Source of the DNA: Podarcis erhardii
Taxonomy: Eukaryota
NCBI GenBank assembly: GCA_964252035.1
Contig: CAXUOO010000304.1
DNA: 64,000 bases
Strand: one strand, 5' to 3'
The notes under the pieces were generated by a model. That model did not search any database and was not told where the DNA came from. It saw nothing but the letters and a program-made list of their open reading frames with translations. The position numbers were made by a program, and so were the translations under genes. The stretch's first letter is position 1, and each line of letters opens with the position of its first letter. Positions 2,961 through 41,000 of the stretch are shown here, piece after piece.

Positions 2961-4121
2961 GTCGTGGATATCAGCGTGCTTTTCAACTAATTGTCTTACC
3001 TACAAATGACAACATACGATATGCATATATGCATACGTGTAAATATCCATAGTGTGTCTTTTCCAGCATGACATTCGCTTGACAAGTATGCAGATTCAGT
3101 AAGAGATACTTAAATATTCGCTTTGAATAGAAATTTCTCGCTCGATGTTTGACTTTTTACATGATAATGTACGTATATATGTTTTGTGGTATGTAGTGCG
3201 TATATGTCTGTGCACTTCGACATTAAAGTTATTGAAGAATGATCATACACATTTACAATTATGTAAATTTTTCTACCTTATCTACATGATATTATTTTGC
3301 TTTAATCGGTATATCAAACTGAGATCTAGTACTTCATTTTGTTCCATCAATCGAACTACCTTCACAATATTGACTACTTGTATATATATGTATACATATA
3401 TATGTATATATATTTGCACGCATGCACGTATGGACATTGAAGTATGATAAATTTGTATGCGAAAGGAGTGAATCTGCTAGCTTTTCGATTTATTTCGTTA
3501 CTTGAAGTTAGGGTTTATATGTTTATTGTGGTAGAGTGTTGACCGAAGCTAAGCAAGTGGAGCGTTTGTACACATGTGTATATGTGATACGTATGTTATA
3601 TATGTACACTCATAAGTTTGGTCTAATGCACGTAGGGGACGGTTTTTCAGATGCTGTTTCGGTTATAAAAACGGAACATGTATATTTACAAATGCTATTT
3701 GCTGAACCATTGACTTTCAAGTTTGTATATAGGTGAATATTTACATGAAGATACATATATATCTATTTACATATATATAGCTGTCTTCCCTCCAACAGTT
3801 TCTTCTATTGTTTCCGGACTCCAGAGGAGTCGACTGTGTCCGCAAGCTTCGGCACAAATTGATTAGCATGTTTTTTGTATCATAGGCATCGTATCACAAA
3901 GGGTCCATATATGGATGTTACAACCAGAGCCAAAGATACGTACACAAGTGAACTACGTAAACTTACACAGCAGCAGAAAACAGTTCATGTGTCTACAGGG
4001 TGCTTCAATAAAACAATTTTATCATACTCCAGAGAGGAATACCAGCTAATCAACACTCACATAAGCAAATGTATACAAATGTGTCTGTATGTATATATAT
4101 ATATATATATTTTAAAAATAA

Positions 4122-4225
4122 GTGTATAGATGTATCCAAATGTATTCATACTGTTTTATATATATATATATATAAATATTATAAAAATATGTGTATAGAT
4201 GTATCCAAATGTATTCATACTGTTT
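4122..4225. repeat. ~68-bp-period duplication around a (TA)n tract
   Basis: gtgtatagatgtatccaaatgtattcatactgttt occurs twice. Confidence 0.8.
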
Positions 4226-9399: not shown

Positions 9400-12300
9400 T
9401 TCTACTGACTGGCTTTACTGCTGTACGGTATAGCTGTGCAAGCCCAAGCTATCAACCTGGGCGTATAAGGACAGAGCAGGAGCCACATCCATTCCAGAAT
9501 TTCCGAGATATCATTGATTTGGCAAACGCAATATATGTCGTCATATTCTCCATCATTGCATACCTTTGGTTTACTCGACGAGGGTCCCGAAACAATAGGG
9601 AAGCCGCTACTTGTCGTCTCTTATTGGAGGACCACATTGACTTAGACTGACCGATCATTACAATTTCGGGCTTGCACTGGGAACTGGCTTTGCATAAGGA
9701 GAGGCGATGCTTGATCACTGCCTCATGCTGGATCACAAACTTTTTGTGATGTAGACTGGGCGTGACTGGCACAGTTTGTATGACAGTTTTTAAAAATATG
9801 TACAGTGCTTTTCTATGTCACGTCAAGGTTCTTGTGCATGTGCCCCTCTCTTTCAAGCAGCTGCTCTTTTTCATGGTGTGATTTTCTGTATGTATTTTGT
9901 GTATTTTCCTAGTTTATGTCTTTTCTGTTGCCACTCTTTCACTTTCTATTGGCTCACAAGCATGTGCATATCCATATTCGCTCAGATAAGTATGTGCGTT
10001 TACGATGCTGTAATAACTTCCTTTTATGGTATAAGGCATCATTCGCAGACATTAATTCTTTGTAGATAGGCTTGTAAAAACGATCAGTTTGTTGATAACA
10101 AATCTAAGCGCGCAGCGTGGCGTGAATATTGTTTTTTTGCGAAACTGCTATGAAGAATTTACATTATTGCTAGTTGACGAATGGTGACTGCAGCTCTTTG
10201 GCGTGTTGCCAGTATACGGTCGCAATCAGAATTACTGCTGGGAAGTTGTTGATCGAGATAAAAAAAAACGAATGCTTTTCTGGTGTATTAGATAGATTGA
10301 AGTAGCAATATCTGCACTGAATCCGAACTCATTTCAATCGTACAAGTCGGCCTCACTAACCCTAGCTTTGGTAGAGCTAATGGTTTGCTATTTCCAGAAT
10401 TCCGATCTAGAAGTGAAGGACAGGCATTGCCTCTTCCCATTGATAGGCTGCGTAATAGAAGATACTGTTCTGAAGGACAGGCATTGCCTCTCCCCATTGA
10501 TAGGCCGCGTAATAGAAGAGACTGTTCTGCTTAAGCTGAACTGTCAAAACATTATAAACTAATTGACATATTATGAGCGACAAGGTCCTGGTTGAGAAAT
10601 GCGAACTAAGTGCTTTGCTATTGGTACTACATGCTAGAGCGACAAAGTATTGATTGCGAGACAAATCATGCTTATGAGGGTATAGTCTCCCTCGTTTATA
10701 ATCTGTCGTACAAGGACACATATGAGGGAAAAAATATAATCTGATAAATAATCGTTATCTTTCTGCCAACCTTTGAATCGTTGATGGCTGGCACCTGCTG
10801 TAAGTATCCAGTCACCACCTTCTTCCGAGTCTCTCGAACGGGTGAAGGAAATTTAATTGAAGTGACCAACGCTGAGCCTTGCAGCTTTTGTACCACAAGC
10901 AGGAGCAAATTTAAAGCGCGCGAAATCATATGCTTGAGAAATTTGATAATGCAATGCAATATGGTTGCGCTCTAATGGACAAAGTTTCGAAGCAGCTCAG
11001 GAACTGCCATGTTCAACTCTTCACTATGAGCTCAATCGAGTAGAGAGAAATTCCGTATGTTATCACTCTTCGCCCCATTCGTACTCGACCAGCTGCGGCA
11101 ATGCCGCTCTTGAAATGTGCCACGCAAACACAATAAAACCAAAAGGCTCGGCCGTGAATTTTTCACCATGCTCTCTGCGTTGACAAGGGACCGAACGCTG
11201 AAGTACATTATTGGTTTAGACTAACATGCCGTAGTACGCAAGAAAAACGGGATCTCGCTCAGCAGCCAGGTGCATAACTTGAATTTCTGTCTCCGTCTAC
11301 TACCAACCCCAGCGATCAGCTTCCACTGCAAATTTCCTCGTATCTCATCATTGATAACAATGCAGCTTCGGTAGAACCCGCCTGCCCATTTGTACACTGC
11401 CAGGAACAAGTGGCACTAGTTGAAAATAAAACCTGTATAATGCTATACATATGTTTCCGCTTTACTGTAGATCTAGAGTTGGGCCTCGAGCATTGGCGCG
11501 TAAGATGCGTATCGATATTTACATTAGTAGCGTTTTATCCGACGTCCATACACTGCTAGAACTCTGTGAATGCAGCCTTATTTGGGCAATCGAACCCTGG
11601 AGACAGATACGTATAAACGTTTGTACCGGTTGAACATGCGGTAGAGTTTTACCTCATGGGTCAAAATGAAATTTTGTCTCTATTCAAGCCCCCACATAGA
11701 GAGTTCTGCTTTGCACTGTAGCACCCTGTCAACAGAGTCAAAAACCCTACACGTTAATTCTAAATGTCTGACATCTATACTCTTCTGTTTGAAAAACGTA
11801 ATTTTTCTTATGCGTCGCTCCAGTATCCGCTGTTTCGCCGGGATATTATTTCTTGTAAAAGAGCTGCATTGCATACGTATGCATACGTATGAATATCATA
11901 GAAGCCGTGATTTGCCCAGTATCATTTAGATGGATTATTTTGTATAAAAAAATAAAAAATATCTCTTATCGAATTTTTTTAAAAATTGCTCAGGTAGGAC
12001 GTACAGTTAACATGAACGCGAAAGGATTCTTGACCTCGGTGCATGGGGTTTCGTCTGTATATTGCTTGTTGTAGTACACGAGTAGTAAACGTGAACTCCA
12101 GTATTTCGGCTGAAAAAATTTTTTTCAAACGTTATAGCTACCGCCTGTTCCGAGACAAAGACATTCATTGTCGCATTTCATGACGGGCCAGTAAAACCCA
12201 CTATAGTTTTTCTCGAAGCAAAAGCTGTAACCCAACCATAGTGTGGACGAGAATGAATTCGCATTTTTGTGATCACGCTAAAGAATCTGGTGTGTTCTGG

Positions 12301-13100
12301 ATCAGAAGTCATGACGTAACATTGTACACCTGCTTGTTTTCAAGAACCGCTTACAACATTGAAGAGCGCTCAGAACTACGATAACTTCATACAAAAAAAG
12401 TATTTTCATCCAAGGCCAGCGTGCAAGGACAAAGTAAGCGATGCGCAGCTTGATATATTTACTCGACCGTGTCTGTATTGTTATTCTGTAATATGGAGAT
12501 GCTGTTCCTAAATAGGAGCAATTAGAACAGCAGCATGAAAAGATTCATAGAGAATATTCTGGTTTCGTTAGCGTTGACCTCAAGAAAAGAGCATGAAGGG
12601 GGAGGGCCAAAGTTCGGAATACTCAGGCTCTCTGATGAGCCGAGCTTACCACTTTTTAGTTAAATTTGCGTGGTCTACAAGCGAAAAAATCGATTGTACT
12701 GTCGACAAATGTGGTAGTCAAATAATTCAAGCCATTTGGGCAAGGACCGGCGCACTAAATCTTTTACGAATTTCTTCTAGTACATGACCTTGTTCTACCC
12801 TTTATCGACAAGAACATGCTCCGCGTTAACTCAGCATGAAGAACAGATCTATTCCCAAAGGGGAATACTGTATATCAATCAACGTGGAATCTATTTGTGT
12901 ACCCCATATTTTTGCAATTGAGCGTTGGGTTGGCAGCGTAATCCAGCTATCAAAAGAACTGGAGGCTATGTTGGCCAGCATTAATTTAAGAACTGATTAC
13001 ATCGCAAAGCATTTCTCTCCCACGTAGGTGCGCGCCCCTGCGACGTTTCTACCAGCGACACTTTTGCTGGGGTGGCGTTAGGCAAATTGGTGAACGGTCC
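9400..13100 (-). pseudogene. Older decayed paralog of the same family
   Basis: Minus-strand fragments LLFRDP...WR.YDD (~9,540-9,620), LLVVQKLQGSALVTSIKFPSPV (~10,830-10,900; cf. LIYLVHKASTANTAIPALAPMPV at ~20,150-20,230), LAVYKWAG (~11,390) and QYRHGRVNIS...GLG*KYFF (~12,380-12,480). Confidence 0.5.
10414..10527. repeat. 57-bp tandem duplication (2 copies, frame-preserving, 19 codons)
   Basis: tgaaggacaggcattgcctct(t/c)cccattgataggc(t/c)gcgtaatagaaga(t/g)actgttc at 10414 and 10471. Confidence 0.95.
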
Positions 13101-13139
13101 GTAAGATACAGTAGTCCCCCCAGTTTGTTGATTGAGAGG

Positions 13140-16100
13140 TTGAGAAAACAGCTGTTGCTCATACAGTGGTTGCAGCTGGCATTGAGGACCTAGGATTGCT
13201 ACGAAATTCTCGCTGCAAAGCTGATTTGCTTATAATTCGCACCTACGCGATTTGCGCCCACAACGGATGTAAAAAACATTGAGTATTGTATTTAGCGAGC
13301 GACTGCACTTATATACACGTAAAGCTGCAGCAGAAGCAAGCTTATTTTTGACGGCAGCAAGACTGGTGGCAAGACTGCAGGAGCAACGTGAACAGGTTGT
13401 GAAATAATTATAAAAGGGAGGTGACCTGCTATGTTGATGTCATCTACAACATTTTCAAGCAGAGAGTTATCGGAAAAAACACATTTTTTTAGCTATGTTG
13501 AATGCACATATTCACCAATACAAGTAGCAAATTTTTTTTGACTGCTATTGCAGGCATCACAATGTGCAATTCAGCATCCGCCCTCTCCTAAACTTTAAAA
13601 TAAGAAAAACCGTAGCTGCAGTACCAGCGTGTCAAATAGCAGCAAAACGATCAGCGACACAAATAATTGTCGCGCTACGCTTCTACGCTTGTTATACATT
13701 CTGCTACGCCTTGAAGGCTCTAGCATTGCGCCGGCTTCTGAGACACAACAGCGCATTTTTTGCTGCAAAAGGCCGAAGTGGAGCACTCTTGCTGAACCAA
13801 AAAAGAGTGCTCTTTTCCTGAAGCTTTGATTTTAATCAGGTTAGAAAGCAAACTGTTACACAGCGAAAGCTGAGCTGCATATATGGAGAGCGCAGATTGC
13901 TCACTCTACCAGTTTGCAGCAGACTGATAAGAGGTCAGGCGGTTGTACACGAGAGAACGCCCTTGAAAGAGTTTACCGATGCCATTTACAGCTCATCTAG
14001 TAATAAACTATGTTAAATATTGAACATATGCGTAGATGCACATACATGAACGCATGAATTTTCATTTGACTAAGTATGAGCATGTGAAGTGCAGTGTACA
14101 ATTGTAGGATAAATCTTCCATCAGTATACGTTTGTTTCCTCCCAAACTTGGCGAGGGAAAGTAGGAAAGCAGCTTTTGAGTTATAGTGGACAAATTCTTT
14201 TTGTGCTGTTGGTGCTGCTAGTGCTGCAGCTTCATCGCTTGTCGTCGTTACCGCACGAAAGGCAGCTTTCGGTGCTGTTTTCGCTGCTGATGCAGGTGCT
14301 ATAACGGAAATAGCGAAAAGTTCATCAGAAACAGCGTTGGCAGATCAAGAAAGACGTCTAGCTACAAAATAACTTTAAAAGTGTAGTTCATGCTCTGATC
14401 CATCTGCACGCAACAATATCAATCACAGCAGCAGCTCTGACAACAGATTCAACTTACAGGTTCAGTAGTACTGCAACACAGTCGCAGCACACAAGACCAC
14501 AACGGCGTCAGAATGGCGACCGCAAATGCAGAGCTACGAGCAAATAAGCAACAACAGCAACAGATCAGTTGAAACACAAGGCACAAGCTGAGGAAGCCCT
14601 TTGATGTTTTACAAGCAACATGTATTGCATAGAATTGCTATCACCAGCAGCAGATTACATAAGGAAGTATGTGCAAAGAATCATGTGATTATTACTCCAT
14701 GAGATTACTTGTAACCTGCATCTGTGCTAAAGCTAGAGATATTGATGAAGCAATCTATCTGAAGGGTAAATATAGCTGCACATCCACCAACAGGCTATGG
14801 AAGAGCATTTAGATCCTTAGCTGGACGAAGAGCGGCAACAGCAAGTGTCGAACAAGATAGAGACGTCCCTAAACGTGGAAGGGCCATCGTTTTTGCTCAA
14901 ACAATTGAGTTCCAGCTGCAAACAAGTTAAGGGTCGTTTAATGATACTGTATTGAATCTACCATTTCTGCTAAACGACCAAAAATAGATGCGCAGAAGAA
15001 TACGAAGCACCAGCAAAACCCGCAATATATCTTCAGCAGATTACAATTTGATGAACGTACACCGGAACTGGTTAGCGAATGAAAGCAGCAAACAAGTGTT
15101 TGTAACACCCTGTAACAGCTGCAACACTCCAGACAATACCTAAAGCCGAAAAAGACCTTCTGCAATGCTTCATAGTTTGAAAAGCACTGGCCACTTAGAC
15201 ACACTAACACACACACACACATACACACACTGCAGAAGCAATTTTTTCAATGATTTAATGCGTATCAGCGAAAAAGTATCAGAAGACATGTAAAACGGCA
15301 ACTAGCGCAACACAAAAACAGAACGGTAGGAAAAAGACTGGCCCGCGCAGTAGAATCGATAAACCACAATAGCCATAGCATCGATATAAACAGAATATTC
15401 TGGCTAGCGTTATTAATTTCAAAGCGGAACCGCACCAGTACCTAACAGGATCTAGCATTAGCAGCAGCACCTTGGTAAACAAGAGGAGAGAGCGGCAGGA
15501 CACAGGTGAAACAGCCGTTAGCGCTGCGCAATAAGAAAAAGATCAACAGCAGTACGAAAACCTTTCCCAATACTTCTATAGCATGCATACATATATATAT
15601 ATATATATGTATACAGACAAGCGTAATACCGAATCAGCTGAGCTGACCAAGCTAGCAGTCACGTATGAAGACCACACCCAGCAGTCGCAAATAGACACTG
15701 CCGCTAGAAGCCGAGGAAATTTAACTACTGCTGCAGAAACGGGTACTCTCAAGAGAAAAAGTAACAACACTCCCAGCACATGCTACAAAAGTAGCAGCAG
15801 CATACACAATCTCTCATTCTGCCTTTAGTAGGAGGCAAACAAGTACGCATGCGTCCGTCAGTGCCTGCAACTGCTGCTGTTGCTCACTCCGATGCATCTC
15901 TTGATGCACGGCAAACGCCTGACGCTAGGAGGCGGTGGCAGAAGCGCGCCTGCGAGCGCCTCTTTTCGTCGTTGTGAAACGGCATCATCCACACCAGCGA
16001 CCCCACGAGCAGCAAATTGTGCTGCTTAGGTCCGCAGGTACACACCCGACGCAAGAATTAGAGCACCAGGTACTGAAAAATGAACGACGCACATTGGAGA

Positions 16101-17799: not shown

Positions 17800-20700
17800 T
17801 ATGCATTTGAGCGTTTGATGCGGCATTAAGGTTTCCGCTAGTCGTTCGTGAAGTTCAGAGCTCAACTGTCTCTCGCTGTACTTGAATCAACTGTCTCATT
17901 TCTGTTCCACCTCTTAGTCTGCGGCTTTTCGCGTGTGGGTCCTCAAGCAATATGGCAACCTGCACGATTCGATTTCCGCCGTTTGGAGGATGCAGTTGTT
18001 TTAGATGTGTTACCAGCCTTTCCTGCGCTATGTGGGTTATTTCATATGCCATGGTATATTCCAGTGCTCAGCCGCAAAACCTGCCTTTTGCTTCTACAGA
18101 CGGTGCTGGCCTTGTCTCACCTAGTGAGACACCTTGGCTTGCCGTAGTATTAGGGATTCTAGTGCTGTTTCTGATGCTGTGGAGGGCATTGGAGACAGCT
18201 CCGCGACGTGAAAATAGGCGGAATGACAGATTCGATCCGATACACAGACGTTTTCTGGACTGGAATCTATAGGATTCAGCGGGCCTACGTAGCTCGACTC
18301 ATCGGCTATGAACACTAGATGGCACCAGCGATGCTTCCAGTGACTTGTCTCAAGGAGATGTGACCCCAAAAAGAATCGAAATGTAGTGCCATTTTGCGCT
18401 CAGCGACGGCTTTCAAAAAGTTTATGGGTCCAAATGATGTCTGCGACGACATTCTAGTCTCTGTTGAGTGGATGTTTGTTGTTCAGCTCAAGTATCGAGA
18501 TCAATTACTTTTCATTTCAAGAAAACCTATGCTGCCGAATAAGTTCAAACTCTTTGCTGTGAATGAGCGACTGGTCTTGATTTTAAGACGATTTTGACTT
18601 TCATTGACACCGATTATCAACACTAGTACGTGGTACTGATGTGATAGAGAAGAAGACGCATTTGCGTTGTGATATCTAATTTGAGTAGTAACTGTTTGCT
18701 ATACAGAAGAGTCGCCGAGTTTCAGCACTGCATTTGGGCTAGGTCATTTTTGAGAATTCAGCTATAATCAGATTAGTCCACTTTAATATACTAACGCTTC
18801 CGAGCATCTCGTGCGGGTTTGTTTTGCCATTGAAAACATACACTACGTTTTAGGCGGGGCACATTGACTTTAGCCTACCAAGCGGGCATACGAGAAAAAA
18901 TCAGAAATCGTGAGCTGTTGAACAACAGCAAATACCTAAATGTTGTACCGATGTCAAGTTCATCTAGATAATGAAAGGCAGTCATGCTGACCGATGTATA
19001 CCCGTGTGGTTTACTTTTATACTGATGACGTGGGACCGCCATACTACACAGCTTGATGTGTGTCGGTCTTTTTTTGGACGTTGAAGCGGATTCCTTTGCC
19101 TGCATATAAGATGACTATCTATACATGTTTACATAGGCGAAGAATGTCGTCAACAGCCATAGAGCCCTGGCATAGGAAAGGGTGGTGAGAGACGGTGCAA
19201 GCTCAGCGCGCCCGAGGTTCCGTTCATATGGGAAATCTCTGCGTCAAGTCCACATTCAAACCTCTAAAAGGTCACCTTTTTCATTTTTCGGCATCTTGGC
19301 GTATTAGGGCTGCGATGAAGTCTGACGACACCAACATTCTCGAGTAAAAGAAGTAGATATCTTTTTTAAAGCGCTGAAGGCACCACAAAATGCAGTTGTC
19401 TCTTTTCGCCTCAATCGGAGACCAGAAAAACACTTTCCTTGGCGCGTGTTTGTCAGCGCTTAATACTCAAACCTGATGGACTATATGGAAGATGCAGTAA
19501 AAACTTGTCATATAACGTAACAAGATTCAACGCGGCCGAGAGGAGGTAAAGACGAGACGAGAATGAACGCGGGGACACTATATCACCATTTTGATAGCGC
19601 TGAACGTGCTTCTTATGGTTGTGTATTACTCGAGAACAGTTGCTGTAGATCATGTGTACGACACGGAGTTTCTCATTCAATCGCGTCGCGGCAGCAGAGA
19701 TATACTTTTGGACAGATTGTCCGGTGGCACTCCAGTTCAATTTCGTTAAACTGTCGTATTTAGGTTCATTTTTTTTTACATATTGCTGCTGAACGAAACA
19801 AACAGTCTGACCCTGTTTGCCAACGCCGTATGAGTGTCATAGAAACCAATGCAGTTTTATATCACTTGTTTTTCGCAAACGCTACGTAACCGAAACGGAC
19901 ATAGCGGTTGTTGGCATTATATGCAACGTGATTTGAGACCTTGGAAAAAGGGCGAGATAGCTGAAGAGTCTCTTAGTCTCCCCCAATTGTCGCTGTGGAT
20001 TGCCCCCCATTGCCTGCAAAAGTTACGAAAGAAGTAATTGGAATCCAGAATTCACTGCATGTATTGTATATACTGGTGGAGTTTGAGATGCAGATAGATT
20101 CAATGTATATTAATCTGCACTTGCTAGAGTCCGTTTTTTATCACCAGCGACCTGAACTGGCATTGGCGCTAGAGCTGGAATTGCCGTGTTCGCAGTTGAT
20201 GCTTTATGTACCAAATATATCAGTTCGGCCCAGTGGAAACAATGCTAGTACGAACGCGTGGCTGATATTGGTGCAATCAGTTCTGTTGATACGAAATGAT
20301 GTGCGCCACAGAATCTGTGTTTAGGGACACAGGACGATCGGGAGACTCTTTTCACGTGGTATTTGCGAGCCAAGGCGGGCATCTGCCCTCGTGATACTTT
20401 TTTGATCGGCCGATTTGTACAGTATCGCTAAAAGAGCTCAGGTGTCGACATAGTTTATAGTAGAGTGAAATACGACAAAAAGACACGAAGTCAACCTAAT
20501 AAACTGTACAATTGCTCTCCGGGAATATAGACTAGGATGAGAAGGTAAAGATAAACTATCGGATCGAATCGCAACTGTTACAATGTCCAACGGGAAAAGA
20601 CGCTTGCTTGCGAAAGGCTGTATAGATAATTACCAACACAATCAGACCCACATCTACCTTTCCTTTGCATGATGCATGACGCTTTACATCAATTACCGGA

Positions 20701-23999: not shown

Positions 24000-26900
24000 A
24001 AACTATGCATTTGAGCGTTTGATGCGGCATTAAGGTTTCCGCTAGTCGTTCGTGAAGTTCAGAGCTCAACTGTCTCTCGCTGTACTTGAATCAACTGTCT
24101 CATTTCTGTTCCACCTCTTAGTCTGCGGCTTTTCGCGTGTGGGTCCTCAAGCAATATGGCAACCTGCACGATTCGATTTCCGCCGTTTGGAGGATGCAGT
24201 TGTTTTAGATGTGTTACCAGCCTTTCCTGCGCTATGTGGGTTATTTCATATGCCATGGTATATTCCAGTGCTCAGCCGCAAAACCTGCCTTTTGCTTCTA
24301 CAGACGGTGCTGGCCTTGTCTCACCTAGTGAGACACCTTGGCTTGCCGTAGTATTAGGGATTCTAGTGCTGTTTCTGATGCTGTGGAGGGCATTGGAGAC
24401 AGCTCCGCGACGTGAAAATAGGCGGAATGACAGATTCGATCCGATACACAGACGTTTTCTGGACTGGAATCTATAGGATTCAGCGGGCCTACGTAGCTCG
24501 ACTCATCGGCTATGAACACTAGATGGCACCAGCGATGCTTCCAGTGACTTGTCTCAAGGAGATGTGACCCCAAAAAGAATCGAAATGTAGTGCCATTTTG
24601 CGCTCAGCGACGGCTTTCAAAAAGTTTATGGGTCCAAATGATGTCTGCGACGACAATCTAGTCTCTGTTGAGTGGATGTTTGTTGTTCAGCTCAAGTATC
24701 GAGATCAATTACTTTTCATTTCAAGAAAACCTATGCTGCCGAATAAGTTCAAACTCTGATTTTTTTTTTAGTCTCTGTTGAGTGGATGTTTGTTGTTCAG
24801 CTCAAGTATCGAGATCAATTACTTTTCATTTCAAGAAAACCTATGCTGCCGAATAAGTTCAAACTCTTTGCTGTGAATGAGCGACTGGTCTTGATTTTAA
24901 GACGATTTTGACTTTCATTGACACCGATTATCAACACTAGTACGTGGTACTGATGTGATAGAGAAGAAGACGCATTTGCGTTGTGATATCTAATTTGAGT
25001 AGTAACTGTTTGCTATACAGAAGAGTCGCCGAGTTTCAGCACTGCATTTGGGCTAGGTCATTTTTGAGAATTCAGCTATAATCAGATTAGTCCACTTTAA
25101 TATACTAACGCTTCCGAGCATCTCGTGCGGGTTTGTTTTGCCATTGAAAACATACACTACGTTTTAGGCGGGGCACATTGACTTTAGCCTACCAAGCGGG
25201 CATACGAGAAAAAATCAGAAATCGTGAGCTGTTGAACAACAGCAAATACCTAAATGTTGTACCGATGTCAAGTTCATCTAGATAATGAAAGGCAGTCATG
25301 CTGACCGATGTATACCCGTGTGGTTTACTTTTATACTGATGACGTGGGACCGCCATACTACACAGCTTGATGTGTGTCGGTCTTTTTTTGGACGTTGAAG
25401 CGGATTCCTTTGCCTGCATATAAGATGACTATCTATACATGTTTACATAGGCGAAGAATGTCGTCAACAGCCATAGAGCCCTGGCATAGGAAAGGGTGGT
25501 GAGAGACGGTGCAAGCTCAGCGCGCCCGAGGTTCCGTTCATATGGGAAATCTCTGCGTCAAGTCCACATTCAAACCTCTAAAAGGTCACCTTTTTCATTT
25601 TTCGGCATCTTGGCGTATTAGGGCTGCGATGAAGTCTGACGACACCAACATTCTCGAGTAAAAGAAGTAGATATCTTTTTTAAAGCGCTGAAGGCACCAC
25701 AAAATGCAGTTGTCTCTTTTCGCCTCAATCGGAGACCAGAAAAACACTTTCCTTGGCGCGTGTTTGTCAGCGCTTAATACTCAAACCTGATGGACTATAT
25801 GGAAGATGCAGTAAAAACTTGTCATATAACGTAACAAGATTCAACGCGGCCGAGAGGAGGTAAAGACGAGACGAGAATGAACGCGGGGACACTATATCAC
25901 CATTTTGATAGCGCTGAACGTGCTTCTTATGGTTGTGTATTACTCGAGAACAGTTGCTGTAGATCATGTGTACGACACGGAGTTTCTCATTCAATCGCGT
26001 CGCGGCAGCAGAGATATACTTTTGGACAGATTGTCCGGTGGCACTCCAGTTCAATTTCGTTAAACTGTCGTATTTAGTTCATTTTTTTTTACATATTGCT
26101 GCTGAACGAAACAAACAGTCTGACCCTGTTTGCCAACGCCGTATGAGTGTCATAGAAACCAATGCAGTTTTATATCACTTGTTTTCGCAAACGCTACGTA
26201 ACCGAAACGGACATAGCGGTTGTTGGCATTATATGCAACGTGATTTGAGACCTTGGAAAAAAGGGCGAGATAGCTGAAGAGTCTCTTAGTCTCCCCAATT
26301 GTCGCTGTGGATTGCCCCCCATTGCCTGCAAAAGTTACGAAAGAAGTAATTGGAATCCAGAATTCACTGCATGTATTGTATATACTGGTGGAGTTTGAGA
26401 TGCAGAATAGATTCAATGTATTTTAATCTGCACTTGCTAGAGTCCGTTTTTTATCACCAGCGACCTGAACTGGCATTGGCGCTAGAGCTGGAATTGCCGT
26501 GTTCGCAGTTGATGCTTTATGTACCAAATATATCAGTTCGGCCCAGTGGAAACAATGCTAGTACGAACGCGTGGCTGATATTGGTGCAATCAGTTCTGTT
26601 GATACGAAATGATGTGCGCCACAGAATCTGTGTTTAGGGACACAGGACGATCGGGAGACTCTTTTCACGTGGTATTTGCGAGCCAAGGCGGGCATCTGCC
26701 CCTCGTGATACTTTTTTGATCGGCCGATTTGTACAGCATCGCTAAAAGAGCTCAGGTGTCGACATAGTTTATAGTAGAGTGAAATACGACAAAAAGACAC
26801 GAAGTCAACCTAATAAACTGTACAATTGCTCCCCGGGAATATAGACTAGGATGAGAAGGTAAAGATAAACTATCGGATCGAATCGCAACTGTTACAATGT

Positions 26901-30349: not shown

Positions 30350-33300
30350 TGCATTTGAGCGTTTGATGCGGCATTAAGGTTTCCGCTAGTCGTTCGTGAA
30401 GTTCAGAGCTCAACTGTCTCTCGCTGTACTTGAATCAACTGTCTCATTTCTGTTCCACCTCTTAGTCTGCGGCTTTTCGCGTGTGGGTCCTCAAGCAATA
30501 TGGCAACCTGCACGATTCGATTTCCGCCGTTTGGAGGATGCAGTTGTTTTAGATGTGTTACCAGCCTTTCCTGCGCTATGTGGGTTATTTTATATGCCAT
30601 GGTATATTCCAGTGCTCAGCCGCAAAACCTGCCTTTTGCTTCTACAGACGGTGCTGGCCTTGTCTCACCTAGTGAGACACCTTGGCTTGCCGTAGTATTA
30701 GGGATTCTAGTGCTGTTTTTGATGCTGTGGAGGGCATTGGAGACAGCTCCGCGACGTGAAAATAGGCGGATTGACAGATTCGATCCGATACACAGACGTT
30801 TTCTGGACTGGAATCTATAGGATTCAGCGGGCCTACGTAGCTCGACTTGTCGGCTATGAACACTAGATGGCACCAGCGACGCTTCCAGTGACTTGTCTCA
30901 AGGAGATGTGACCCCAAAAAGAATCGAAATGTAGTGCCATTTTGCGCTCAGCGACGGCTTTCAAAAAGTTTATGGGTCCAAATGATGTCTGCGACGACAA
31001 TCTAGTCTCTGTTGAGTGGATGTTTGTTGTTCAGCTCAAGTATCGAGATCAATTACTTTTCATTTCAAGAAAACCTATGCTGCCGAATAAGTTCAAACTC
31101 TGATTTTTTTTTTAGTCTCTGTTGAGTGGATGTTTGTTGTTCAGCTCAAGTATCGAGATCAATTACTTTTCATTTCAAGAAAACCTATGCTGCCGAATAA
31201 GTTCAAACTCTTTGCTGTGAATGAGCGACTGGTCTTGATTTTAAGACGATTTTGACTTTCATTGACACCGATTATCAACACTAGTACGTGGTACTGATGT
31301 GATAGAGAAGAAGACGCATTTGCGTTGTGATATCTAATTTGAGTAGTAACTGTTTGCTATACAGAAGAGTCGCCGAGTTTCAGCACTACATTTGGGCTAG
31401 GTCATTTTTGAGAATTCAGCTATAATCAGATTAGTCCACTTTAATATACTAACGCTTTTGAGCATCTCGTGCGGTTTTGTTTTGCCATTGAAAACATACA
31501 CTACGTATTAGGCGGGGCACATTGATGTTACCCTACCAAGCGGGCATACGAGAAAAAATCAGAAATCGTGAGCTGTTGAACTACAGCAAATACTTAAATG
31601 ATGTACCAATGTCAAGGTCATCTAGATAATGAAAGGCAGTCATGCTGACCGATGTATACCCGTGTGGTTTACTTTTATACTGATGACGTGGGACCGCCAT
31701 ACTACACAGCTTGATGTGTGTCGGTCTTTTTTTGGACGTTGAAGCGGATTCCTTTGCCTGCATATAGGATGGCTCTCTATACATGTTTACATAGGCGAAG
31801 AATGTCGTCAACAGCCATAGAGCCTTGGTATAGGAAAGGGTGGTGAGAGACGGTGCAAGCTCAGCGCGCCCGAGGTTCCGTTCGTATGGGAGTTCTCTGC
31901 GTCAAGGCCACACTCAAATCTTTAAAAGGTCACCTTTTTCATTTTTCGGCATCTCGGCGTATTAGGGCTGCGATGAAGTCTGACGACACCAACGTTCTCG
32001 AGTAAAAGAAGTAGATATCTTCTTTAAAGCGCTGAAGGCACCAAAAAATGCAGTTGTCTCTTTTCGCCTCAATCGGAGACCAGAAAAACACTTTCCTTGG
32101 CGCGTGTTTGGCAGTGCTTCGTCTTCAATGCTAATGGAATATATCGAGGACGCAATACAAACTTACCATACAGCATAAAGAGAATGTAATCGGCTGAGAG
32201 TAGTGATTGTCGAGAACGGGTTGTATGCAGGAACAATATTTTGCCACTTTGATTGCGCTGGATTTAAACCTTATGGTCGTGTTTTACAAGATGTTAGCTG
32301 CCTACTGATTTTCTTTCTTGTAGTAGATCATGTATAAGGCACATTATTTTTCATGCGAGACGGCAGCAAGAATATACATTTTGGACAAATGGTCCGAATG
32401 CGCTCTACTTCAACAGCGACCAACTGTCGTGTTATCTTTGATAATAATACTTGAACATATTGCTGCAGAAGCGAACGGGAAATTCTGACCTGGTTTTTGA
32501 ACGCCCTATCCGTGCATGTAACAGAAGCAACGCTGTTTTAGATAACCAGGCTTTTCGCGAACGTTACGTGTTTCTGACCAAAACGGCCATAGCGCTTCAC
32601 TTCTTTGCAACGTGACTTGTGGACACTCTTCTGGTTCCCCACAGCTGCGGCTGTAAATTGCTTACCCACACGAGGTGTGTCGTGCCTGCAGAAACAACGA
32701 AACATGTATTTGGCATGCAGACTTTACTACATGTACCATATAAGCTCTGCTGGACACAGATGGAATTGGAAATGCAAATGAAGAACGGATGAATGACTGA
32801 AAGAGTCAGTGACTTTGGTTCTTTAGAGAACCACTCAGATTAAAAGAATCCCTCTCTTCCCTCTCCTACTCATATCTTCCGAAGGCACTGGAATCTATTG
32901 AGGTCTCTTGCTTCAGTGCACTTGCTTTTCGACTTTCTCTGTTGTGCATGACCATAGCCTCAATGAAACAACTTCTCACTCTGGGATAGCTGCTCGCCAT
33001 TGTAAGCGAATGACTGTCCTTGACAAAATTTTTTAGAATTGATGTATATCGCACTCTCATGCGCGAAGAGGCAAAGTTCTAGAGTGGGGACGGGGAAGCC
33101 CCAACAGTAGGGGATCATATATGACTTCCCAGTCAAATAATGCAGACAATGGTGTTGACACTGGTATACTCAACTGGTGGATAGGTTCACAGGTGCTTGA
33201 AAGTGCCTTTGAGAATATCTTTGATGCAGACTGGCATGAAGCTTATTTCTACATCAAATTTGCTATAAAAATGAGATATACGAAAGCAGTCAATCTTCAA

Positions 33301-36300
33301 GCGCCTCTGGTCATGCATTTCTTCGGCAGCCAAGATACAAATGTCTTCAAGCGTCCTATATGAGAAATTCTCAGTTTACTGACAGGGTGCGTATATGCCA
33401 AACAGGAAGCGAGTTGCTGGCTGTCTCGTTGATAATTTCATAGTAATGGCAACTCGCGGGCTAAGGCGATTCCTTGTTGCACTTATTCGCTACTATTATA
33501 AATCAACCACTAGAATATGTACGCGGATAAAAATGGTTATTTTTAGATGTATATGTTACCAAGTATACGAAAGAATCAACGCGTCGCGCATTTTGCCGTT
33601 TACCGCGTAGCTGGTGGACTGGACAAGTGTGCGGCGCGCCATGTTTGCGGCTATGAGGCGACAGTCCAACCTTTGATATTGTCATCTAAATTTTTACGAC
33701 TTTCGTTAGTGGAAGCTGAGCTGCTCTGGCTAGGTTACATTGAACCTTTATTGGTGACGAACATGATGGATTTGGCAGGGCAAATCTGCCAGCTGATTAT
33801 TACGACTTAATCCGTGAAGGCTATCCTAAATTTTGTGTGTACACTCCAGCTTAACGCCACGACGCGCCACAGTTGCACATGATAATCTTTAACATAGAAT
33901 GTACTTGAGGTTACATGCGTGATTTGATAAAAAAAAAATTCAAATCTACGTATTCAGTGAACATAGATACGAGCGGCTACGGAAAAATGCACTATTCTAT
34001 TTAACGCTCTCGTGATCTACCGCGAAAAGCCTCTGAGCAGATCCTGCTATTCCGGCACAGTGGTTTTTTTATGTATATATACAGTTGACTGTCAAATTGC
34101 TGAATGGACGCCGCGTGTTACCTTTACTTCTAATGTAATCACCATGCGTGCAACATTGCAACTGTCTCGACTTCGCCAGCTCTACGTGATGGTATCCGCA
34201 CTGAAGGCGCCTCAGTTCCTCACACAGATAATGGTCTACGTTTTCTTGTGAATGTACATTAATACCTGCAAATGACCATGCTGATGGAGATGGTTCAAGT
34301 CTGTATTCCTTGACAAAAGTATGCGCATGTACCTCATTGGTCACCGTGTCTATAAAACGGAGAAGCGAGTAGCGAGTGAAGACATAGGATTAGCAGTGTT
34401 CAGCTATTCATCGAAAACAAGTAAAGTTCTGTAAGGTGTTTGCGGCACGGAAAGAGTCCACCTTAAGCTCTCGACAACAGCATACAAGAGCGAGAAAGCT
34501 GGGTAGCACGCGTGGAGACGCAAGCGCTACAGGAAAGCATTCAGAGGAATGGATGGTGGATCCTATCTGGATGTGATATCTGTAGACTATCATATTATGT
34601 GGTATTTGTAACAAGCATTTACTTAGCTTTCATCTTGGTGAATGAATGATATGAAGCATTGAAACGATAAGTATACGAATGCATTTTTCAAATTCCATGT
34701 CTGAGGATATTGTCTGACGCTATCTCGGCCTCATCGTTGTCGCAGTTCGTGTCAAAACGTCTCTTGTTTCTACAACTGCATGTGATCTGGTCGTAGTAGA
34801 TGGTGCAGCCGGTTTGATTACAATCACTTCAGTTTCCGTTGTTGCCTCGTCTATACATGTGAAGATATATATGATATCTAGTATACAAGTATACTCTGTG
34901 AAGGTTGTGGAAGCGCTGTAGTCACGAGTTTCTGCTCGTGTGTGATGTGTAGCGATACACTGGTGGAATTTTGGTCGCGTACCGTGACGCTATTTGTATG
35001 CATGAGGGGAAATTAGCAAGCATGTAGAATCGTGCTGGAGAAGCAATTTTTGCTCAGAAGGCAAGCAGGAGCAGTATCAGTAGCAGAGAAGCTAACACTA
35101 TGTATAGCTCGTTGTAGCCTTGAAAGTTGAGCTTGAAACCAGATTAATTGTTTTCATCTGCCTCCTGTGAGAGCTTGGACTTTTTTGGTGGAAAACGTCC
35201 AAACTCTCACAGGTGAATGCTCTGTAAGACAATCGCAGCATAGTAACAAAATACGCAGGAGCGGCAGCATACTAGCGAAAAACGCAGTTGCAATGGCAGC
35301 AGAGACCCTAGCTAAGATTGCACCAGCCGTTGCATCATTGGGAAGATCGAAGCTGCGGCGAAGGAAACGGGAAGTTCTGCGTCGACAAGAGCACCCGAGA
35401 CTTCTTCCTTGGCACGTGCTGCTAGTTTCCCTTCTGCTGCGGGTAAGAGTCAGCTAGCGAACGGTTATGTATGTAGAGAAGCAGAAATGATGCCAAGTAT
35501 TAGTAATATCTGAAACTGGAGTCAAGGAACCTTCGTGTGCAGCTGCAAGTTTCCACCTGCCCTTGCGATCGCAGTTGGCGTTGCCGTGTTCGCCCTTGCT
35601 ACACCAAGCACCGTGATGTAAGTCACTCATACGCGGTGAAAACAATTTGGTACATATGCGTCCCACCCCAGATTGAAATCAGTGCATTTGAAACTGTCGA
35701 CGAGAGGTATTGTTTGTGTCAGGCTCTTGCGATCACACCTGTTGATCTTCTCAGACTTTGTGATTCAACACACACAGCGATCGGATCAACAATGACTCTT
35801 TTCACGCTCGACCGCCGTACCTCTGTGTCAATTTCTCTCAATGGGATGATTCACATGCTACCGCAGGCCTCGACACATGCCACGGTGCGGTATAATTTGA
35901 CTTGAGTATTAATTGAGGAACCTACCAAAACGGCTGATAAATTTTGGGACGAGAGCCCGATCTTGTGTCGCAGCAAATTTGCTCGTGGTATGCTAGATTC
36001 GTGCTTGACCTGTAGGCTGTGAGATCAGAAGACAATCATCCATTGCAAAACACGCAGAATTCCACAGCGCAGAATGTGGACGTCAGACTCGGCGGTTCAG
36101 GCTGAAAGCATCGGCGCGTATCATCAGTTTGCCGGCTGAGCGGCCCTTGAAGAATTTGTTCGCTTCACCCTCGACGATACGACAAGACTTTTGTAAAGTG
36201 TCGGGAGGGAGATTAGTCGTTCTTGGGTCATTTATTGAAACGGGTGACGAGGTCGTGAGGCTCCATGGTATAGTTCTAATGGCGATACGCGCAACTTCGC

Positions 36301-36850
36301 TAAAAAAAAACAACATATACATGATGCATTACCTCTGGGAACAAAACGTAGAAGTGGAACTTAATGTAATACTAGTCATTTATACAGCCTACTGTAAGCT
36401 GGCGTTTTTCCCATTGACATTATCGAAGTAGCGATTCCTTCGTAGACTTGTTGCTATCTAGAGCAAACTATTGTGATTCAGCTAACAGCCCACTGGTGCG
36501 ATAACCTTTGCAGATTTTATTTTTGCTTATCAATTTCTCAGTGTGAATAAGTGAATTTTCAAAATTGCAAGTGTGTGCTTGACGATTCGTGAACGCAAGT
36601 GGGGAAGCTCCGAAAACACTGCATGATTGTGTTTGACTGGCTACGCCTGCGTGTAGTAGCATTGCCTTGCGTAAAATAAGCTAGCGTTAAGACCGATGCA
36701 GCAACAATAGCAAAGTCTGATTCATACTGGATTCGAAAAACAGTTCTGTGGCAGGGTTTAGATGAAATTTTGACTGATTTACACCACTATGGCGGTTTCA
36801 CTAATAGTGCAACCTGATCAAACTATTACTCCATGAAGCTGTAGACACAC
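30350..36850 (-). pseudogene. Chimeric family pseudogene: left part from the recent amplification, right part (from ~32,110) an older diverged paralog with an inverted segment
   Basis: Near-identical to units 1/2 up to 32,110, then diverged but alignable: 32,110-32,450 to 19,450-19,750; 35,570-35,850 to 20,175-20,400; 36,520-36,850 to 20,920-21,200. LRGKRQNARRVD at ~33,570-33,610 resembles the domain end seen in other copies. Confidence 0.5.
31003..31211. repeat. Same 99-bp duplication plus T-rich filler, in unit 3
   Basis: Identical structure to 24,659-24,867. Confidence 0.95.
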
Positions 36851-37286
36851 TTATTGTGTACAGTCCATTGTGCCATTTATTGTCAATCATTGAGATGGTG
36901 ATTCCAGTTACTGCATATTCTGGTCGATATTTGAAAAAAAATTTCAAGTTTGGTTTTCATCAAAATGGTAAAATTACTGCAGATCACGTACCAATTGGCC
37001 AGTTTGTGAAAATGCATCTTTCCTTCTTCGTATAGTTTACAATAAACTCGTATTTTGCCTCTCGAGGATGGATGGGGCAACTGCTTATTCTCATTCGTAA
37101 GAATATTTTAGTGTAGAATTGTAGATCAGTTTTATGAGATCGTTTATGTGAGCGGGTCACACAACACTCCAATATTTGCAAATCTCTCTGTCATCTTAAG
37201 TTCGTCAACATGCATTTGAAACAAGTGAGTTGTGAGTTCCTTGCTAGTCTGGGAAACAAAGCAATTTAGGAGCCATTGATTCCCTT

Positions 37287-37328
37287 AATTGGAACGATAC
37301 AGAGAAGATTAGCATGGCCCCTGCGCAA
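37287..37328 (+). pseudogene. U6: U6 snRNA internal fragment (equivalent to human U6 nt 29-70), lacking the canonical 5' end and truncated in the ISL
   Basis: AATTGGAACGATACAGAGAAGATTAGCATGGCCCCTGCGCAA is 42/42 identical to the conserved U6 core as I recall it (ACAGAGA box, AGC triad, 5' arm of the ISL). The expected continuation GGATGACACGC is absent. Confidence 0.93.
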
Positions 37329-37406
37329 CGTGCATTTGAAACAAGTGAGTTGTGAGTTCCTTGCTAGTCTGGGAAACAAAGCAATTTAGGAGCCATTGAT
37401 TCTCTT

Positions 37407-37448
37407 AATTGGAACGATACAGAGAAGATCAGCATGGCCCCTGCGCAA
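37407..37448 (+). pseudogene. U6: Second U6 snRNA fragment (one substitution, GATT to GATC)
   Basis: 41/42 match to the first copy, exactly 120 bp downstream. Confidence 0.92.
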
Positions 37449-38049
37449 CGTGCATTTGAAACAAGTGAGTTGTGAGTTCCTTGCTAGTCTGGGAAACAAA
37501 GCAATTTAGGAGCCATTGATTCCCTTAACTCTCTACGAAAAAAAATAAAAAGGTACCAATTGAGATTTTATTAACGTCTTACGCTGATTCCAAGGCTTGA
37601 AACACTAAGTTTTACCGCGTTCAGCAACACAATGCACGAGCTTGCACGCATGCTGCGTTGATACTGCCTGTCGCTACTATGTACGCTTATGCCGCTCTCA
37701 GAATAGAGACAGATCGCACAGAATGTATATTAAGGCAGCAAATTTCATATACCATTTGATCAAACATTATCACACATACATCTATAACAATTGTATAAAA
37801 TTTGTGCGGTTTTTCGTTTCTTCGTTCGCTTGTTTCGCGCTAAATGACATATAAAAACAAAATGTCATGAATCAATACAGTCTGCACTGTCTACGCACTT
37901 CATGAGAGCTCTACTATAGAGCGTGATGGCACGACTCTAATATGCAACAGATCAGAATTAGAGACACTACATGCTGGTGTGACGTAATCAAATTGACAAG
38001 TTGTTAGTTAAACATAAGAGTCCACAATTCAGTGACTGAGTTTGGGAAA

Positions 38050-41000
38050 AATCGCTGCTGCTTAGGTTTTTGTTCCAGCTGGCATTGAGAGACCTAAGGT
38101 TGTTGTGTTGTTGCCAACTTTCTTGCTGTGAAGCTCATGCACTTAAACAATTCGCAGCTACGCGGTTTTGGTCAAGGAAAAAGCATAAAAATTCTGGATA
38201 TACTTTATGAAGTGCATGCACCAGTATACACACTATGCTGCAGCAGACGCACGTCGGCTTTTGAAGGCAACAACACCGACTTTAAGGCTGCAGGAGAAAT
38301 ATGCGCAGGTTTTGAAAAAGTAACGGGACGGGCACCTGCTGCAGCGATGTCATCTACAACCTTTCATCATAACATTTTCAGAACTAGATTGCACAAAATA
38401 AAGGTAACACGTGTTTTCAACAGCTACAGCAGGGCATGACAACAAAACAAATCAACGTCCATCCCCTTCGGAACTTCAAAGTGGCTCAGAACGCAGCTCA
38501 GCAGCAACCGGACGATCAACGATACATAGTGTCGCACAAGTCTAGGTTAAAAGTTAAAAGACGTTTTGAGAACTTCAGCACTCTGCCTGCGCAAACAGCA
38601 CCAGGTTACCAAATTAATGCACCAGGAACAACTTCGGGGCCACAGCAATCAAACAGTACGCTGTCTGCTGCGATTAATAGTATAGAAGCCCGACGTATGC
38701 TGCATAAAAAATAAATGTTCTTCCTGTAAAGCTTTATCGTGCATTTCGATTATATACAGTTTTTGAAGCGGATTGTGATACAGCAAGTGATGAGCAGCAC
38801 ATGTGACACGCAAATATGCGCGTCGTATCAGCTTTTGCGGTAGGAGCAGCAGTAGTGCTTTATGCGCGTTGCACTTGCCAGAATATAGTGCATCAAACTA
38901 TTTAAAAGTAACGCGGTTTTTCACGAGCAAATGCAGTGAAAGGAAAACGTCTGATACATGATAATGATTTGGTAAAAACAGATGTGAGCTTCTAAACATA
39001 TGTAGACGTGCATATCCACATACATTCAAGGCACTCCTTATCATCAAAAAACGGATGCGCATGTGAGCTGCGCGTGTACAGTTGTATAAATAACCGACTA
39101 CTACTGTTAGTTCACGTCATTTCTGGAGTAAGGAAAAAAAAAAGAAGCAGCTTCTCAGTCGTGGAGCCCGAACTCTTTTCGTGCTCTTGCTGCTGCTAAG
39201 GCGGCCCCTTCACTGATTGCCGTTGTTAGAGTAGAAGCAACAGCCTTCGTTGCTCCTTTCGCTGCTGATGCAGCTACTGTTATAAAGACGGGGAAAGTTT
39301 ATTAGAAAAATGCCTTGGCAAACCAGTAAATTGGCCCGAGCGCTACAAAAGTAACAGTAAGCGGAAAGATGTAGTCCATGCGCGGATCAATCTGCACGCA
39401 ACAATACCAACCACAGCAAAAGAAGCTATAACAGATTTAGCTGCACATGTTCAATAAATATAGCAGCAGAAAACAACGCAGACCGCAGCGCGCAGAAACA
39501 AAAAGATGTAAAAAACTTGAATGCCAGTGAAGAGCGTTGAGCAAACATGCGAACAAGAAAACAGTTAAAATCACAGGACATAATTTCTGAATCAGCCTGA
39601 TGATCTAATAGCAACTTTTACTCCATGAGAACTCGCCGTCATAGCAGCAGGGATCACAATGAAGCATAAGCAGGAAAAAAACAAACATTTATCCTAGCTA
39701 CTGCACTATAAAATCCACAACCAGTGGCACCTTGATCAGCTACAAAAAGTTGGAGATTCAGTGGCACCAACAACAACCGCAAGAGCAAGAACGAAAGATT
39801 ACAGCAACAATAGGTTAATAATACGGCCACAGATTCGAGGAAAAATATCAAGAACTCGGCTGCAAATAAGTGAGGAGCATAGGTCTGAAACATGGATATA
39901 TGAATATTGACAATTATTAACAGATCAACAAGCATAGCTGCGCAGAAAAGAACGAAACAACAACACGATCCGTAGTGCAGAGTTAGCAGGGTACAACCTA
40001 GAATTGAGCAGGGAATGTGACACTTCGAAGGCAAAGCAGGAGCAAGAAAGTGGCTGCAACATGCTACAACAGCAGCAACTCGATCGGCGGAAACCAGGAA
40101 TGTCCTTGTGCAACGCAACACACATTGCAAAACACGAGCCACTACCAAAACTGCAGACGCAGTGGTACCAGCTTTCGAATGAGTACAGCCTCAAGATAGC
40201 AGAAAGTATATATCACATGTTCTATAACAACAACAGAGATTAAGCAGTGAGAAAAAGCTGGCCTTAACGCGGGAAAATTGTTAAAACCAAGATAGCCATA
40301 GCACCAATAGAAAAAAATTTCCAACTACCAGCAGCAGACTAAAAAAGCAACCGCAGCACTACCTGACAGGAGCTCGCAGCAACAGCGGCATCCCGCTGAC
40401 AAGAGAAGAGACCGAAAATATACAGATGAGACCGCTGCTAGCGCTGCGCGACAGAAGGTACTTTGCTAGCAACACCAGATTCAAGAGTAGCTTACTATTC
40501 CAATAGTTCTGTATGCATATATTCACCCACATGTACATATACACATATGTACATCTACGTCTGCTTTTTTTTAAACACGTATGATCATAACGGAACAGCT
40601 ACCTGACCAAGCTAAAGAAGAGCAAAGCTAGCAAATGCAAACACACACTGCAGCTAGTAGCAACGGAGCGTCAAATGCAGCTCTCGAAGCAGGTTCGCCG
40701 AAAAGACTGAATATTTTTGCTACTGTAGGTACAAGGCAAAGCATACATGATCTCTCATTTTGCTTCCAATCGGAGGCAATCGAATACGCATGCGTCCCTC
40801 AATGCCTGCAATTGCTTCTGCTGGTCCCTCTGCTGCTTCTCTCGGTGCACGGCGAATGCCTGCAATAGGCGGTGGTGGCAGAAGCGAGCCTGCATATGCC
40901 TCTTCTTGTTGTTGTGGAACATCAGCGCCACCATACCTACCAGCAACATCACGAGCAGCGAATTGTGCTGCGTGTATCTGCAAGTGCACACGACATAAAA

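What the first reader, a model, noticed from the sequence alone, without database searches (positions are those of the whole stretch)
37206..37528. A U6 snRNA core fragment captured between 78-bp direct repeats and tandemly duplicated
Seen: 42 nt identical to the catalytic core of U6 (ACAGAGA box, AGC triad, 5' half of the ISL), twice, in the layout A-U6-A-U6'-A. Both junctions show microhomology: A ends ...cttAA where U6 has ...AAAATTGG, and the U6 end GCGCAA overlaps the CAAC that precedes the first A. Established: a U6 cut in the ISL loop cannot act in splicing, and truncated U6 retrocopies in mammals are made by LINE machinery, whereas I recall only LTR (chromovirus-like) elements being reported in Eimeria. 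Inference: an RNA-templated insertion (reverse transcription or RNA-patched break repair) with an unusually long duplication, followed by unequal exchange. If the array is transcribed, it could give a small RNA able to pair with U4, U2 or 5' splice sites. It is also open whether the fragment came from parasite or host U6.
Basis: partly seen in the sequence, partly recalled or inferred. Interest (0 to 1): 0.8.

Follow-up and report, generated by a model that had tools for sequence, protein, structure and literature searches.

The report
U6 fragment inside small tandem duplication
A 37-42 letter piece of the spliceosome's U6 RNA sits as filler at the joint of a small duplicated stretch of non-coding DNA in a lizard-borne coccidian parasite, and it looks like a scar of DNA break repair rather than a working gene.

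Summary
At 37206-37528 a 120-bp unit is repeated 2.7 times (98% identity), laid out A-U6-A-U6'-A. A is 83 nt. Each U6 piece matches the U6 catalytic core over 42 nt, perfectly in copy 1 and with one change in copy 2.

It is not a U6 gene. Rfam passes its threshold on the core alone. The 3' strand of the internal stem-loop and a T-run terminator are missing, the putative 5' hairpin is only weak, and A resembles U6 no more than shuffled sequence does.

Because 2.7 is not a whole number of copies, the first product must have been A-U6-A: an 83-bp direct duplication with 37 nt of filler, and 2 and 3 nt of microhomology at the joints. One more unit was added later.

The same window holds a second event of this design, with 99-nt arms, an 11-nt filler and a preserved empty site. 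I therefore read the array as break- or replication-repair by template switching, not retrotransposition with a long target-site duplication.

Not settled:
- whether the template was U6 RNA or the U6 gene;
- whether it was parasite or host U6;
- whether the array is transcribed;

The event is ordinary in kind.

The parts
37206..37528 (+). Whole array: 120-bp unit x 2.7, layout A-U6-A-U6'-A
   Evidence: TRF, the repeat finder, sequence
37206..37288 (+). A copy 1 (83 nt, keeps the native left flank). It has A at 37210 where the later copies have G. It contains GTGAGTT twice in tandem at 37225-37238.
37287..37328 (+). U6 piece, copy 1: 42/42 identical to the conserved U6 core (ACAGAGA box, AGC triad, 5' strand and loop of the internal stem-loop). 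Only 37289-37325 (37 nt) is unambiguously U6; AA at the 5' joint and CAA at the 3' joint are shared with A.
   Evidence: Rfam alignment
37326..37408 (+). A copy 2, with a private T at 37403
37407..37448 (+). U6 piece, copy 2: 41/42, with a private T-to-C change at 37430 next to the AGC triad
37446..37528 (+). A copy 3. It ends at ...CCCTTAA and is followed by unrelated flank, with no U6 after it.
   Evidence: no U6 hit here at E<=10

Best explanation
The array is a neutral, non-coding repair scar with no function as U6.

Step 1 (inferred). During repair of a break or a stalled fork in a single-copy stretch L-A-R, the growing strand copied A. It then switched on 2-3 nt of microhomology to a U6 template (U6 RNA or the U6 gene), copied about 37 nt of the core, and switched back to the start of A. 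The product was A-U6-A: an 83-bp tandem duplication with templated filler at its joint.

Step 2 (inferred). Unequal exchange or replication slippage between the A copies added one 120-bp unit, giving A-U6-A-U6-A.

Step 3 (shown). Three transitions have since accumulated, one of them inside a U6 core.

The enzymology is not shown. It may be polymerase-theta-like end joining, or capture of a fragment at a staggered break by end joining.
For: (1) Copy number. Exchange between 120-bp repeats adds whole units, so an array of 2.69 copies must go back to a 203-nt A-U6-A state.

(2) Boundaries. Both ends of the array coincide, within 0-3 nt, with the two ends of the U6 match. That follows necessarily if U6 lies between two copies of A. 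It would be a double coincidence, roughly (4/120)^2, if this were a truncated array of U6 genes.

(3) Sharp edges. Identity to U6 falls from 42/42 to chance. A against the U6 5' and 3' parts scores no better than shuffles (P = 0.76-0.99), and the third A gives no U6 hit at E<=10.

(4) Microhomology of AA and CAA at the joints.

(5) A parallel event in the same window. At 24659-24867 and 31003-31211, 99-nt arms flank an 11-nt filler. A single 99-nt copy at 18455-18553, in the first unit of the 6.3-kb amplification, preserves the empty site. Plain tandem duplications lie at 10414-10529 and 4088-4225.

(6) No sign of function. There is no open frame through the array. Its folds are no more stable than shuffles (z from -0.4 to -1.8). 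One U6 copy has mutated.

(7) Precedent.
- Tandem duplications of about 100 bp to 10 kb with microhomology and templated insertions at the joint (PMC8654963).
- Short patches templated from distant transcribed loci at breaks (PMC5110952).
- Polymerase theta copying RNA (PMC8195485).
- Coccidia filling breaks with short foreign DNA by end joining (PMC10636329).
Against: No empty site for this locus was found, and no reads were laid, so the ancestral state L-A-R is inferred. The donor U6 of the parasite was not available, so the microhomology lengths rest on the Rfam consensus.

Templated insertions by polymerase theta usually copy sequence next to the break. Here the template is at least 26 kb away, or is RNA.

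Whether this parasite has polymerase theta was not tested.

There is an ascertainment bias: this filler was noticed only because it is U6.
Confidence: 0.55

Rival explanations
1. A reverse-transcribed U6 fragment was inserted at a widely staggered break. Fill-in of the overhangs made a 78-83-bp target-site duplication. Unequal exchange then added a unit.
For: The layout and microhomology are the same. U6 is an abundant nuclear RNA, so it is a likelier donor a priori than a 100-bp gene in a large genome. RNA-derived patches at breaks are known. The parallel 99-nt/11-nt event could equally reflect a habit of widely staggered breaks.
Against: There is no poly(A), no retroelement sequence and no reverse transcriptase in the window (Pfam). 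Only decayed LTR elements are reported for Eimeria. The sequence does not distinguish this version from template switching during synthesis.
Confidence: 0.2
2. The 120-bp unit belongs to a multi-copy family (a satellite or dispersed repeat) of the parasite, and this locus is only one small array of it.
For: Runs of a second organism, from three studies, hold 5-16% of the sampled words of 36200-38500 but under 5% of 37452-38500. The array could account for up to about 13% of the words.
Against: Two other runs of the source sample hold none of the words. Neither of two exact A-derived patterns (28 and 29 nt) occurs in JGI metagenome contigs, and A is absent from the rest of the window. The held words may lie in the left flank instead.
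Confidence: 0.1
3. A decayed or collapsed array of real U6 genes (pseudogenes).
For: Rfam aligns the full-length model to each unit above its gathering score. A weak 4-bp hairpin sits where the 5' stem-loop should be. GGAAC and GUUCC could mimic the telestem.
Against: Neutral decay does not leave 42/42 identity next to chance-level flanks. The universally conserved GGAUGA strand of the internal stem-loop is absent. There is no T-run terminator, and only about 17 nt are left for a spacer or promoter. The array ends coincide with the ends of the core.
Confidence: 0.05
4. Assembly artefact: over-expansion or chimeric joining.
For: Spanning reads could not be examined. The one run that holds the stretch is probably the source data.
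Against: The three copies carry distinct variants. The array is only 323 bp, and the flanks are unique. That run's contigs hold 96-100% of the sampled words.
Confidence: 0.05
5. A transcribed locus giving a U6-core small RNA, or its antisense, that pairs with U4, U2, 5' splice sites or U6 itself.
For: The ACAGAGA box and AGC triad are intact in copy 1. There is no T4 run inside the array on the + strand, and the first TTTT lies about 40 nt downstream.
Against: No RNA run holds the flank. No structure stands out above shuffles. One copy is mutated next to the AGC triad. No recognisable promoter was found.
Confidence: 0.05

Closest known systems
Small tandem duplications with microhomology and templated filler at the joint (polymerase-theta end joining of aborted repair synthesis; PMC8654963)
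   Same: A direct duplication of about 100 bp. A short insertion lies exactly at the joint. There are 2-3 nt of microhomology on both sides.
   Different: The filler here is copied from a distant small-RNA gene or its RNA, not from sequence next to the break. The pathway is not shown in coccidia.
Class 2 templated sequence insertions: RNA-derived patches at double-strand breaks (PMC5110952)
   Same: A short piece of a transcribed distant locus, with end-joining features and no poly(A).
   Different: Class 2 insertions have no flanking duplication. Here an 83-bp duplication flanks the patch.
LINE-mediated U6 retropseudogenes and U6/L1 chimeras of mammals (PMC4476161, PMC6789731), and the 3'-truncated copies noted in the lizard host
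   Same: An ectopic DNA copy of U6 sequence.
   Different: Those start at U6 nucleotide 1, are joined to LINE sequence or poly(A), and have target-site duplications of about 7-20 bp. This one is an internal fragment cut at both ends, with 83-bp arms and no LINE trace.
Capture of organellar DNA (NUMT/NUPT) at breaks by end joining in coccidia (PMC10636329)
   Same: The same group of parasites, short (about 100 bp) foreign filler at breaks, and non-coding sites.
   Different: The source here is U6, not organellar DNA. Flanking duplications are not described for those insertions in the passages I read.
U6 spliceosomal RNA gene (Rfam RF00026)
   Same: A 42-nt catalytic core. The bit score is above the gathering threshold.
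   Different: The 3' strand of the internal stem-loop, a convincing 5' stem-loop and the terminator are all lacking.

Membership tests
Functional U6 snRNA gene (RF00026) | ACAGAGA box and AGC triad | tested here: met
   Perfect in copy 1. Copy 2 has U-to-C one base 5' of AGC.
Functional U6 snRNA gene (RF00026) | Complete internal stem-loop (5' strand, loop, and the GGAUGA... 3' strand) | tested here: not met
   After GCGCAA the sequence is CGUGCA... and the 3' strand is absent (alignment). The predicted fold shows no such stem-loop.
Functional U6 snRNA gene (RF00026) | 5' stem-loop and 3' part homologous to U6, with a terminal U-run | tested here: not met
   A against the consensus 5' and 3' parts is no better than shuffles (P 0.76-0.99). 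There is no T4 in the unit. Rfam marks non-standard pairs in the 5' stem.
Functional U6 snRNA gene (RF00026) | Score above the Rfam gathering threshold | tested here: met
   54.0 and 51.9 bits against 44, but the score is carried by the 42-nt core.
LINE-mediated U6 retropseudogene | Complete U6 5' end, joined to LINE sequence and/or poly(A), with a short target-site duplication | tested here: not met
   It is an internal fragment (about nt 29-70, numbering from memory). There is no poly(A) and no LINE sequence, and the arms are 83 bp. No reverse transcriptase domain was found in the scanned ORFs.
Tandem duplication with templated filler (template switching or theta-mediated joining) | Insert lies exactly between two direct copies of the flanking sequence | tested here: met
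   The A-U6-A layout. The non-integer copy number requires it.
Tandem duplication with templated filler (template switching or theta-mediated joining) | Microhomology at both switch points | tested here: met
   AA (2 nt) and CAA (3 nt), judged against the Rfam consensus because the parasite's own U6 was not available.
Tandem duplication with templated filler (template switching or theta-mediated joining) | Empty site (single A, no insert) in a relative or paralogue | not testable with these tools
No hit in metagenome contigs. An empty site was found only for the parallel 99-nt event, at 18455-18553.
Tandem duplication with templated filler (template switching or theta-mediated joining) | Identified donor template (RNA or DNA) | not testable with these tools
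   There is no other U6 in the window, and the rest of the genome cannot be reached.

The most novel reading that the evidence does not exclude
The array is transcribed and yields a small RNA that carries the U6 catalytic core without its internal stem-loop, or the antisense of that core. Such an RNA could titrate U4, U2, 5' splice sites or U6 in the parasite. It would be a naturally arisen snRNA decoy, born from a repair scar.
Probability: 0.04. Interest if true: 0.75.

Novelty: new member of a known kind. Interest (0 to 1): 0.3.

Why it matters
If the template was U6 RNA, this is a natural example of RNA-patched break repair in a lineage where only decayed LTR elements, and no LINEs, have been reported. 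Together with the second event in the window, whose empty site is preserved, it points to duplication-with-filler as a recurring mutation type in this coccidian. That would help in reading how its tandem repeats are born.

It is also a caution for annotation. Rfam calls two full-length U6 genes here, and neither can be one.

Beyond that, it is a single, probably neutral locus.

Tried and rejected
Reads:
I searched only with A and the flanks.
- Local scripts on the closed machine still read the window file.
- The findings tool itself widened my place query 37452-37960 to 35952-39460.

Unit A elsewhere:
- Two exact scans of metagenome contigs found nothing.
- The findings index found nothing; a blank there means nothing.
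- There is no other copy in the window.

Organism identity by my own tests failed. Pfam found nothing on 34 ORFs, apart from two sub-threshold chance matches at E>0.1. The word-based protein search found nothing, nor did the Atlas. Four exact-protein look-ups were also blank. That the window comes from a coccidian co-assembled with a wall lizard rests on earlier notes of this scan and on the Q/A/S-rich ORFs.

Ideas rejected:
- Permuted or intron-bearing U6: A holds none of the missing U6 parts.
- Structured RNA: no fold stands out above shuffles.
- Coding repeat: there are stops in all frames.
- An organellar or rRNA piece in the left flank, to explain the words held by the second organism: no Rfam or Pfam hit.
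- Homology of the array to the site upstream of the old paralogue at 13054: none.

Full report
WHAT IS THERE

The window has one tandem array at 37206-37528: period 120, 2.7 copies, 98% matches, no indels. Read directly, it is A-U6-A-U6'-A.

- A is 83 nt and lies at 37206-37288, 37326-37408 and 37446-37528.
- Between the A copies lies sequence identical to the conserved core of U6 snRNA: the ACAGAGA box, the AGC triad, and the 5' strand and loop of the internal stem-loop.
- 42 nt match U6 (37287-37328 and 37407-37448).
- The first two (AA) and the last three (CAA) of those 42 are also the end and the start of A. So 37 nt are unambiguously U6, and the joints carry 2 and 3 nt of microhomology.

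Rfam RF00026 hits both units at 54.0 and 51.9 bits against a gathering score of 44 (E about 1e-10), and finds no other U6 in the 64 kb. Neither the core nor A occurs elsewhere in the window, with zero expected by chance.

The copies differ at three sites, all transitions:
- 37210: A in copy 1, G in copies 2 and 3.
- 37403: T in copy 2 only.
- 37430: C in U6 copy 2 only, one base 5' of the AGC triad.

NOT A U6 GENE

Rfam aligns its full 105-position model, but only the core aligns.

- After GCGCAA the universally conserved GGAUGA strand of the internal stem-loop is replaced by unrelated sequence.
- The unit has no T-run.
- Only about 17 nt would be left between successive 'genes'.
- A compared with the Rfam consensus 5' part and 3' part scores no better than shuffled A (P = 0.76-0.99).
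- The third A, which has no core after it, gives no U6 hit even at E<=10.

Identity therefore drops from 42/42 to chance at both edges. Neutral decay of a pseudogene would not produce that pattern.

No reading frame is open through the array. Neither strand of the unit or of the whole array folds more stably than dinucleotide shuffles (z from -0.4 to -1.8).

HOW IT AROSE

Unequal exchange or slippage between 120-bp repeats adds whole units. An array of 2.69 units therefore goes back to a 203-nt state, A-U6-A. That state is an 83-bp direct duplication with a 37-nt insert exactly at the joint.

Both ends of the array coincide, within 0-3 nt, with the two ends of the U6 match. This is automatic if U6 lies between two copies of A. 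It would be a double coincidence if the array were a truncated series of longer U6-derived units.

The G at unit offset 5 is shared by the two A copies that follow a U6 piece. That fits the middle A being a recombinant made when the extra unit was added. The two private changes of the middle unit came later, or arose in that event.

A SECOND EVENT OF THE SAME DESIGN

At 24659-24867, and in its copy at 31003-31211, two perfect 99-nt arms flank an 11-nt filler (GA followed by a T-run). The first unit of the 6.3-kb amplification carries the same 99 nt only once, at 18455-18553, with the same flanks. That is a preserved empty site. GATTTT occurs twice within 45 nt downstream and may have been the local template; this is not proven.

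Plain tandem duplications of 57 and 69 bp lie at 10414-10529 and 4088-4225.

Small duplications, with or without filler, are thus a recurring mutation type in this DNA. The U6 array is the one case whose filler can be recognised.

MECHANISM

I read step 1 as template switching during repair synthesis. The strand copies A, switches on AA to a U6 template, copies about 37 nt, then switches back on CAA to the start of A. The scheme works for either strand polarity, so the template can be the U6 gene or U6 RNA.

Precedents:
- Tandem duplications of about 100 bp to 10 kb, whose joints show microhomology and templated insertions (PMC8654963).
- Short patches from distant transcribed loci at breaks (PMC5110952).
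- Polymerase theta copying RNA (PMC8195485).
- Coccidia readily filling breaks with short foreign DNA by end joining (PMC10636329).

The sequence shows no poly(A), no element and no reverse transcriptase.

RNA is the likelier donor a priori because U6 is abundant. That argument is weakened by ascertainment, since an anonymous filler would not have been noticed.

The 42-nt core is near-invariant among eukaryotes, so host and parasite origin cannot be told apart.

CONTEXT

I could not identify the organism myself. Pfam, a word-based protein search, the Atlas and exact-protein look-ups were all blank. Earlier notes of this scan describe a coccidian co-assembled with a wall lizard. The long Q/A/S-rich ORFs fit that.

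The array lies in a long stretch with no detectable coding sequence. It sits 430 bp left of an old 3-kb non-coding paralogy: 37960-40991 against 13054-16045, 59% identity, with no frame conservation.

WHAT COULD NOT BE DONE

There is therefore no test of spanning reads, copy-number variation or transcription.
The findings tool widened one place query by itself.
- One run, probably the source, holds 96-100% of the sampled words.
- Runs of a second organism hold 5-16% of the words of 36200-38500 but under 5% of 37452-38500. They therefore hold something in 36200-37451. That may be the array, which could explain up to about 13%, or part of the left flank, where Rfam and Pfam see nothing. This is unexplained.
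- No RNA run holds the flank.

VERDICT

It is best explained as a small tandem duplication with a U6-templated filler, later expanded by one unit. It is ordinary in kind, and a neat but single and probably neutral example.

Noticed in passing
window 24659-24867 and 31003-31211; empty site at 18455-18553: A second 'duplication with filler': two perfect 99-nt arms flank an 11-nt filler (GA plus a T-run). It is present in two units of the 6.3-kb amplification, while the first unit has the 99 nt only once with the same flanks. GATTTT occurs twice within 45 nt downstream and may be the local template.
   Followed up: yes
window 37960-40991 versus 13054-16045: An old colinear paralogy of about 3 kb (59% identity overall, blocks at 66-76%). 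Similarity appears in all frames with stops, so it is non-coding. It brackets the 6.3-kb amplified region, and both copies are A-rich on the + strand.
   Followed up: partly
window 37225-37238 (and the same offsets in A copies 2 and 3); 37210: A contains GTGAGTT twice in tandem, a consensus-like 5' splice site motif. Only the first A reads ATG five codons upstream of it; the later copies read GTG. This is probably chance, but it is curious next to a U6 fragment.
   Followed up: no
window 36200-37451: Sequencing runs of a second, coded organism from three studies hold 5-16% of the sampled 31-mers of 36200-38500, yet under 5% of 37452-38500. Two other runs of the source sample hold none. It is unknown what part they hold.
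   Followed up: partly
window 10414-10529 and 4088-4225: Plain two-copy tandem duplications of 57 and 69 bp (94% identity) without filler. They show that small duplications are common in this DNA.
   Followed up: partly
window 37262-37364 and 37382-37484: Rfam RF00026 reports two full-length U6 genes above its gathering score although only 42 nt are U6. This is an annotation trap.
   Followed up: yes
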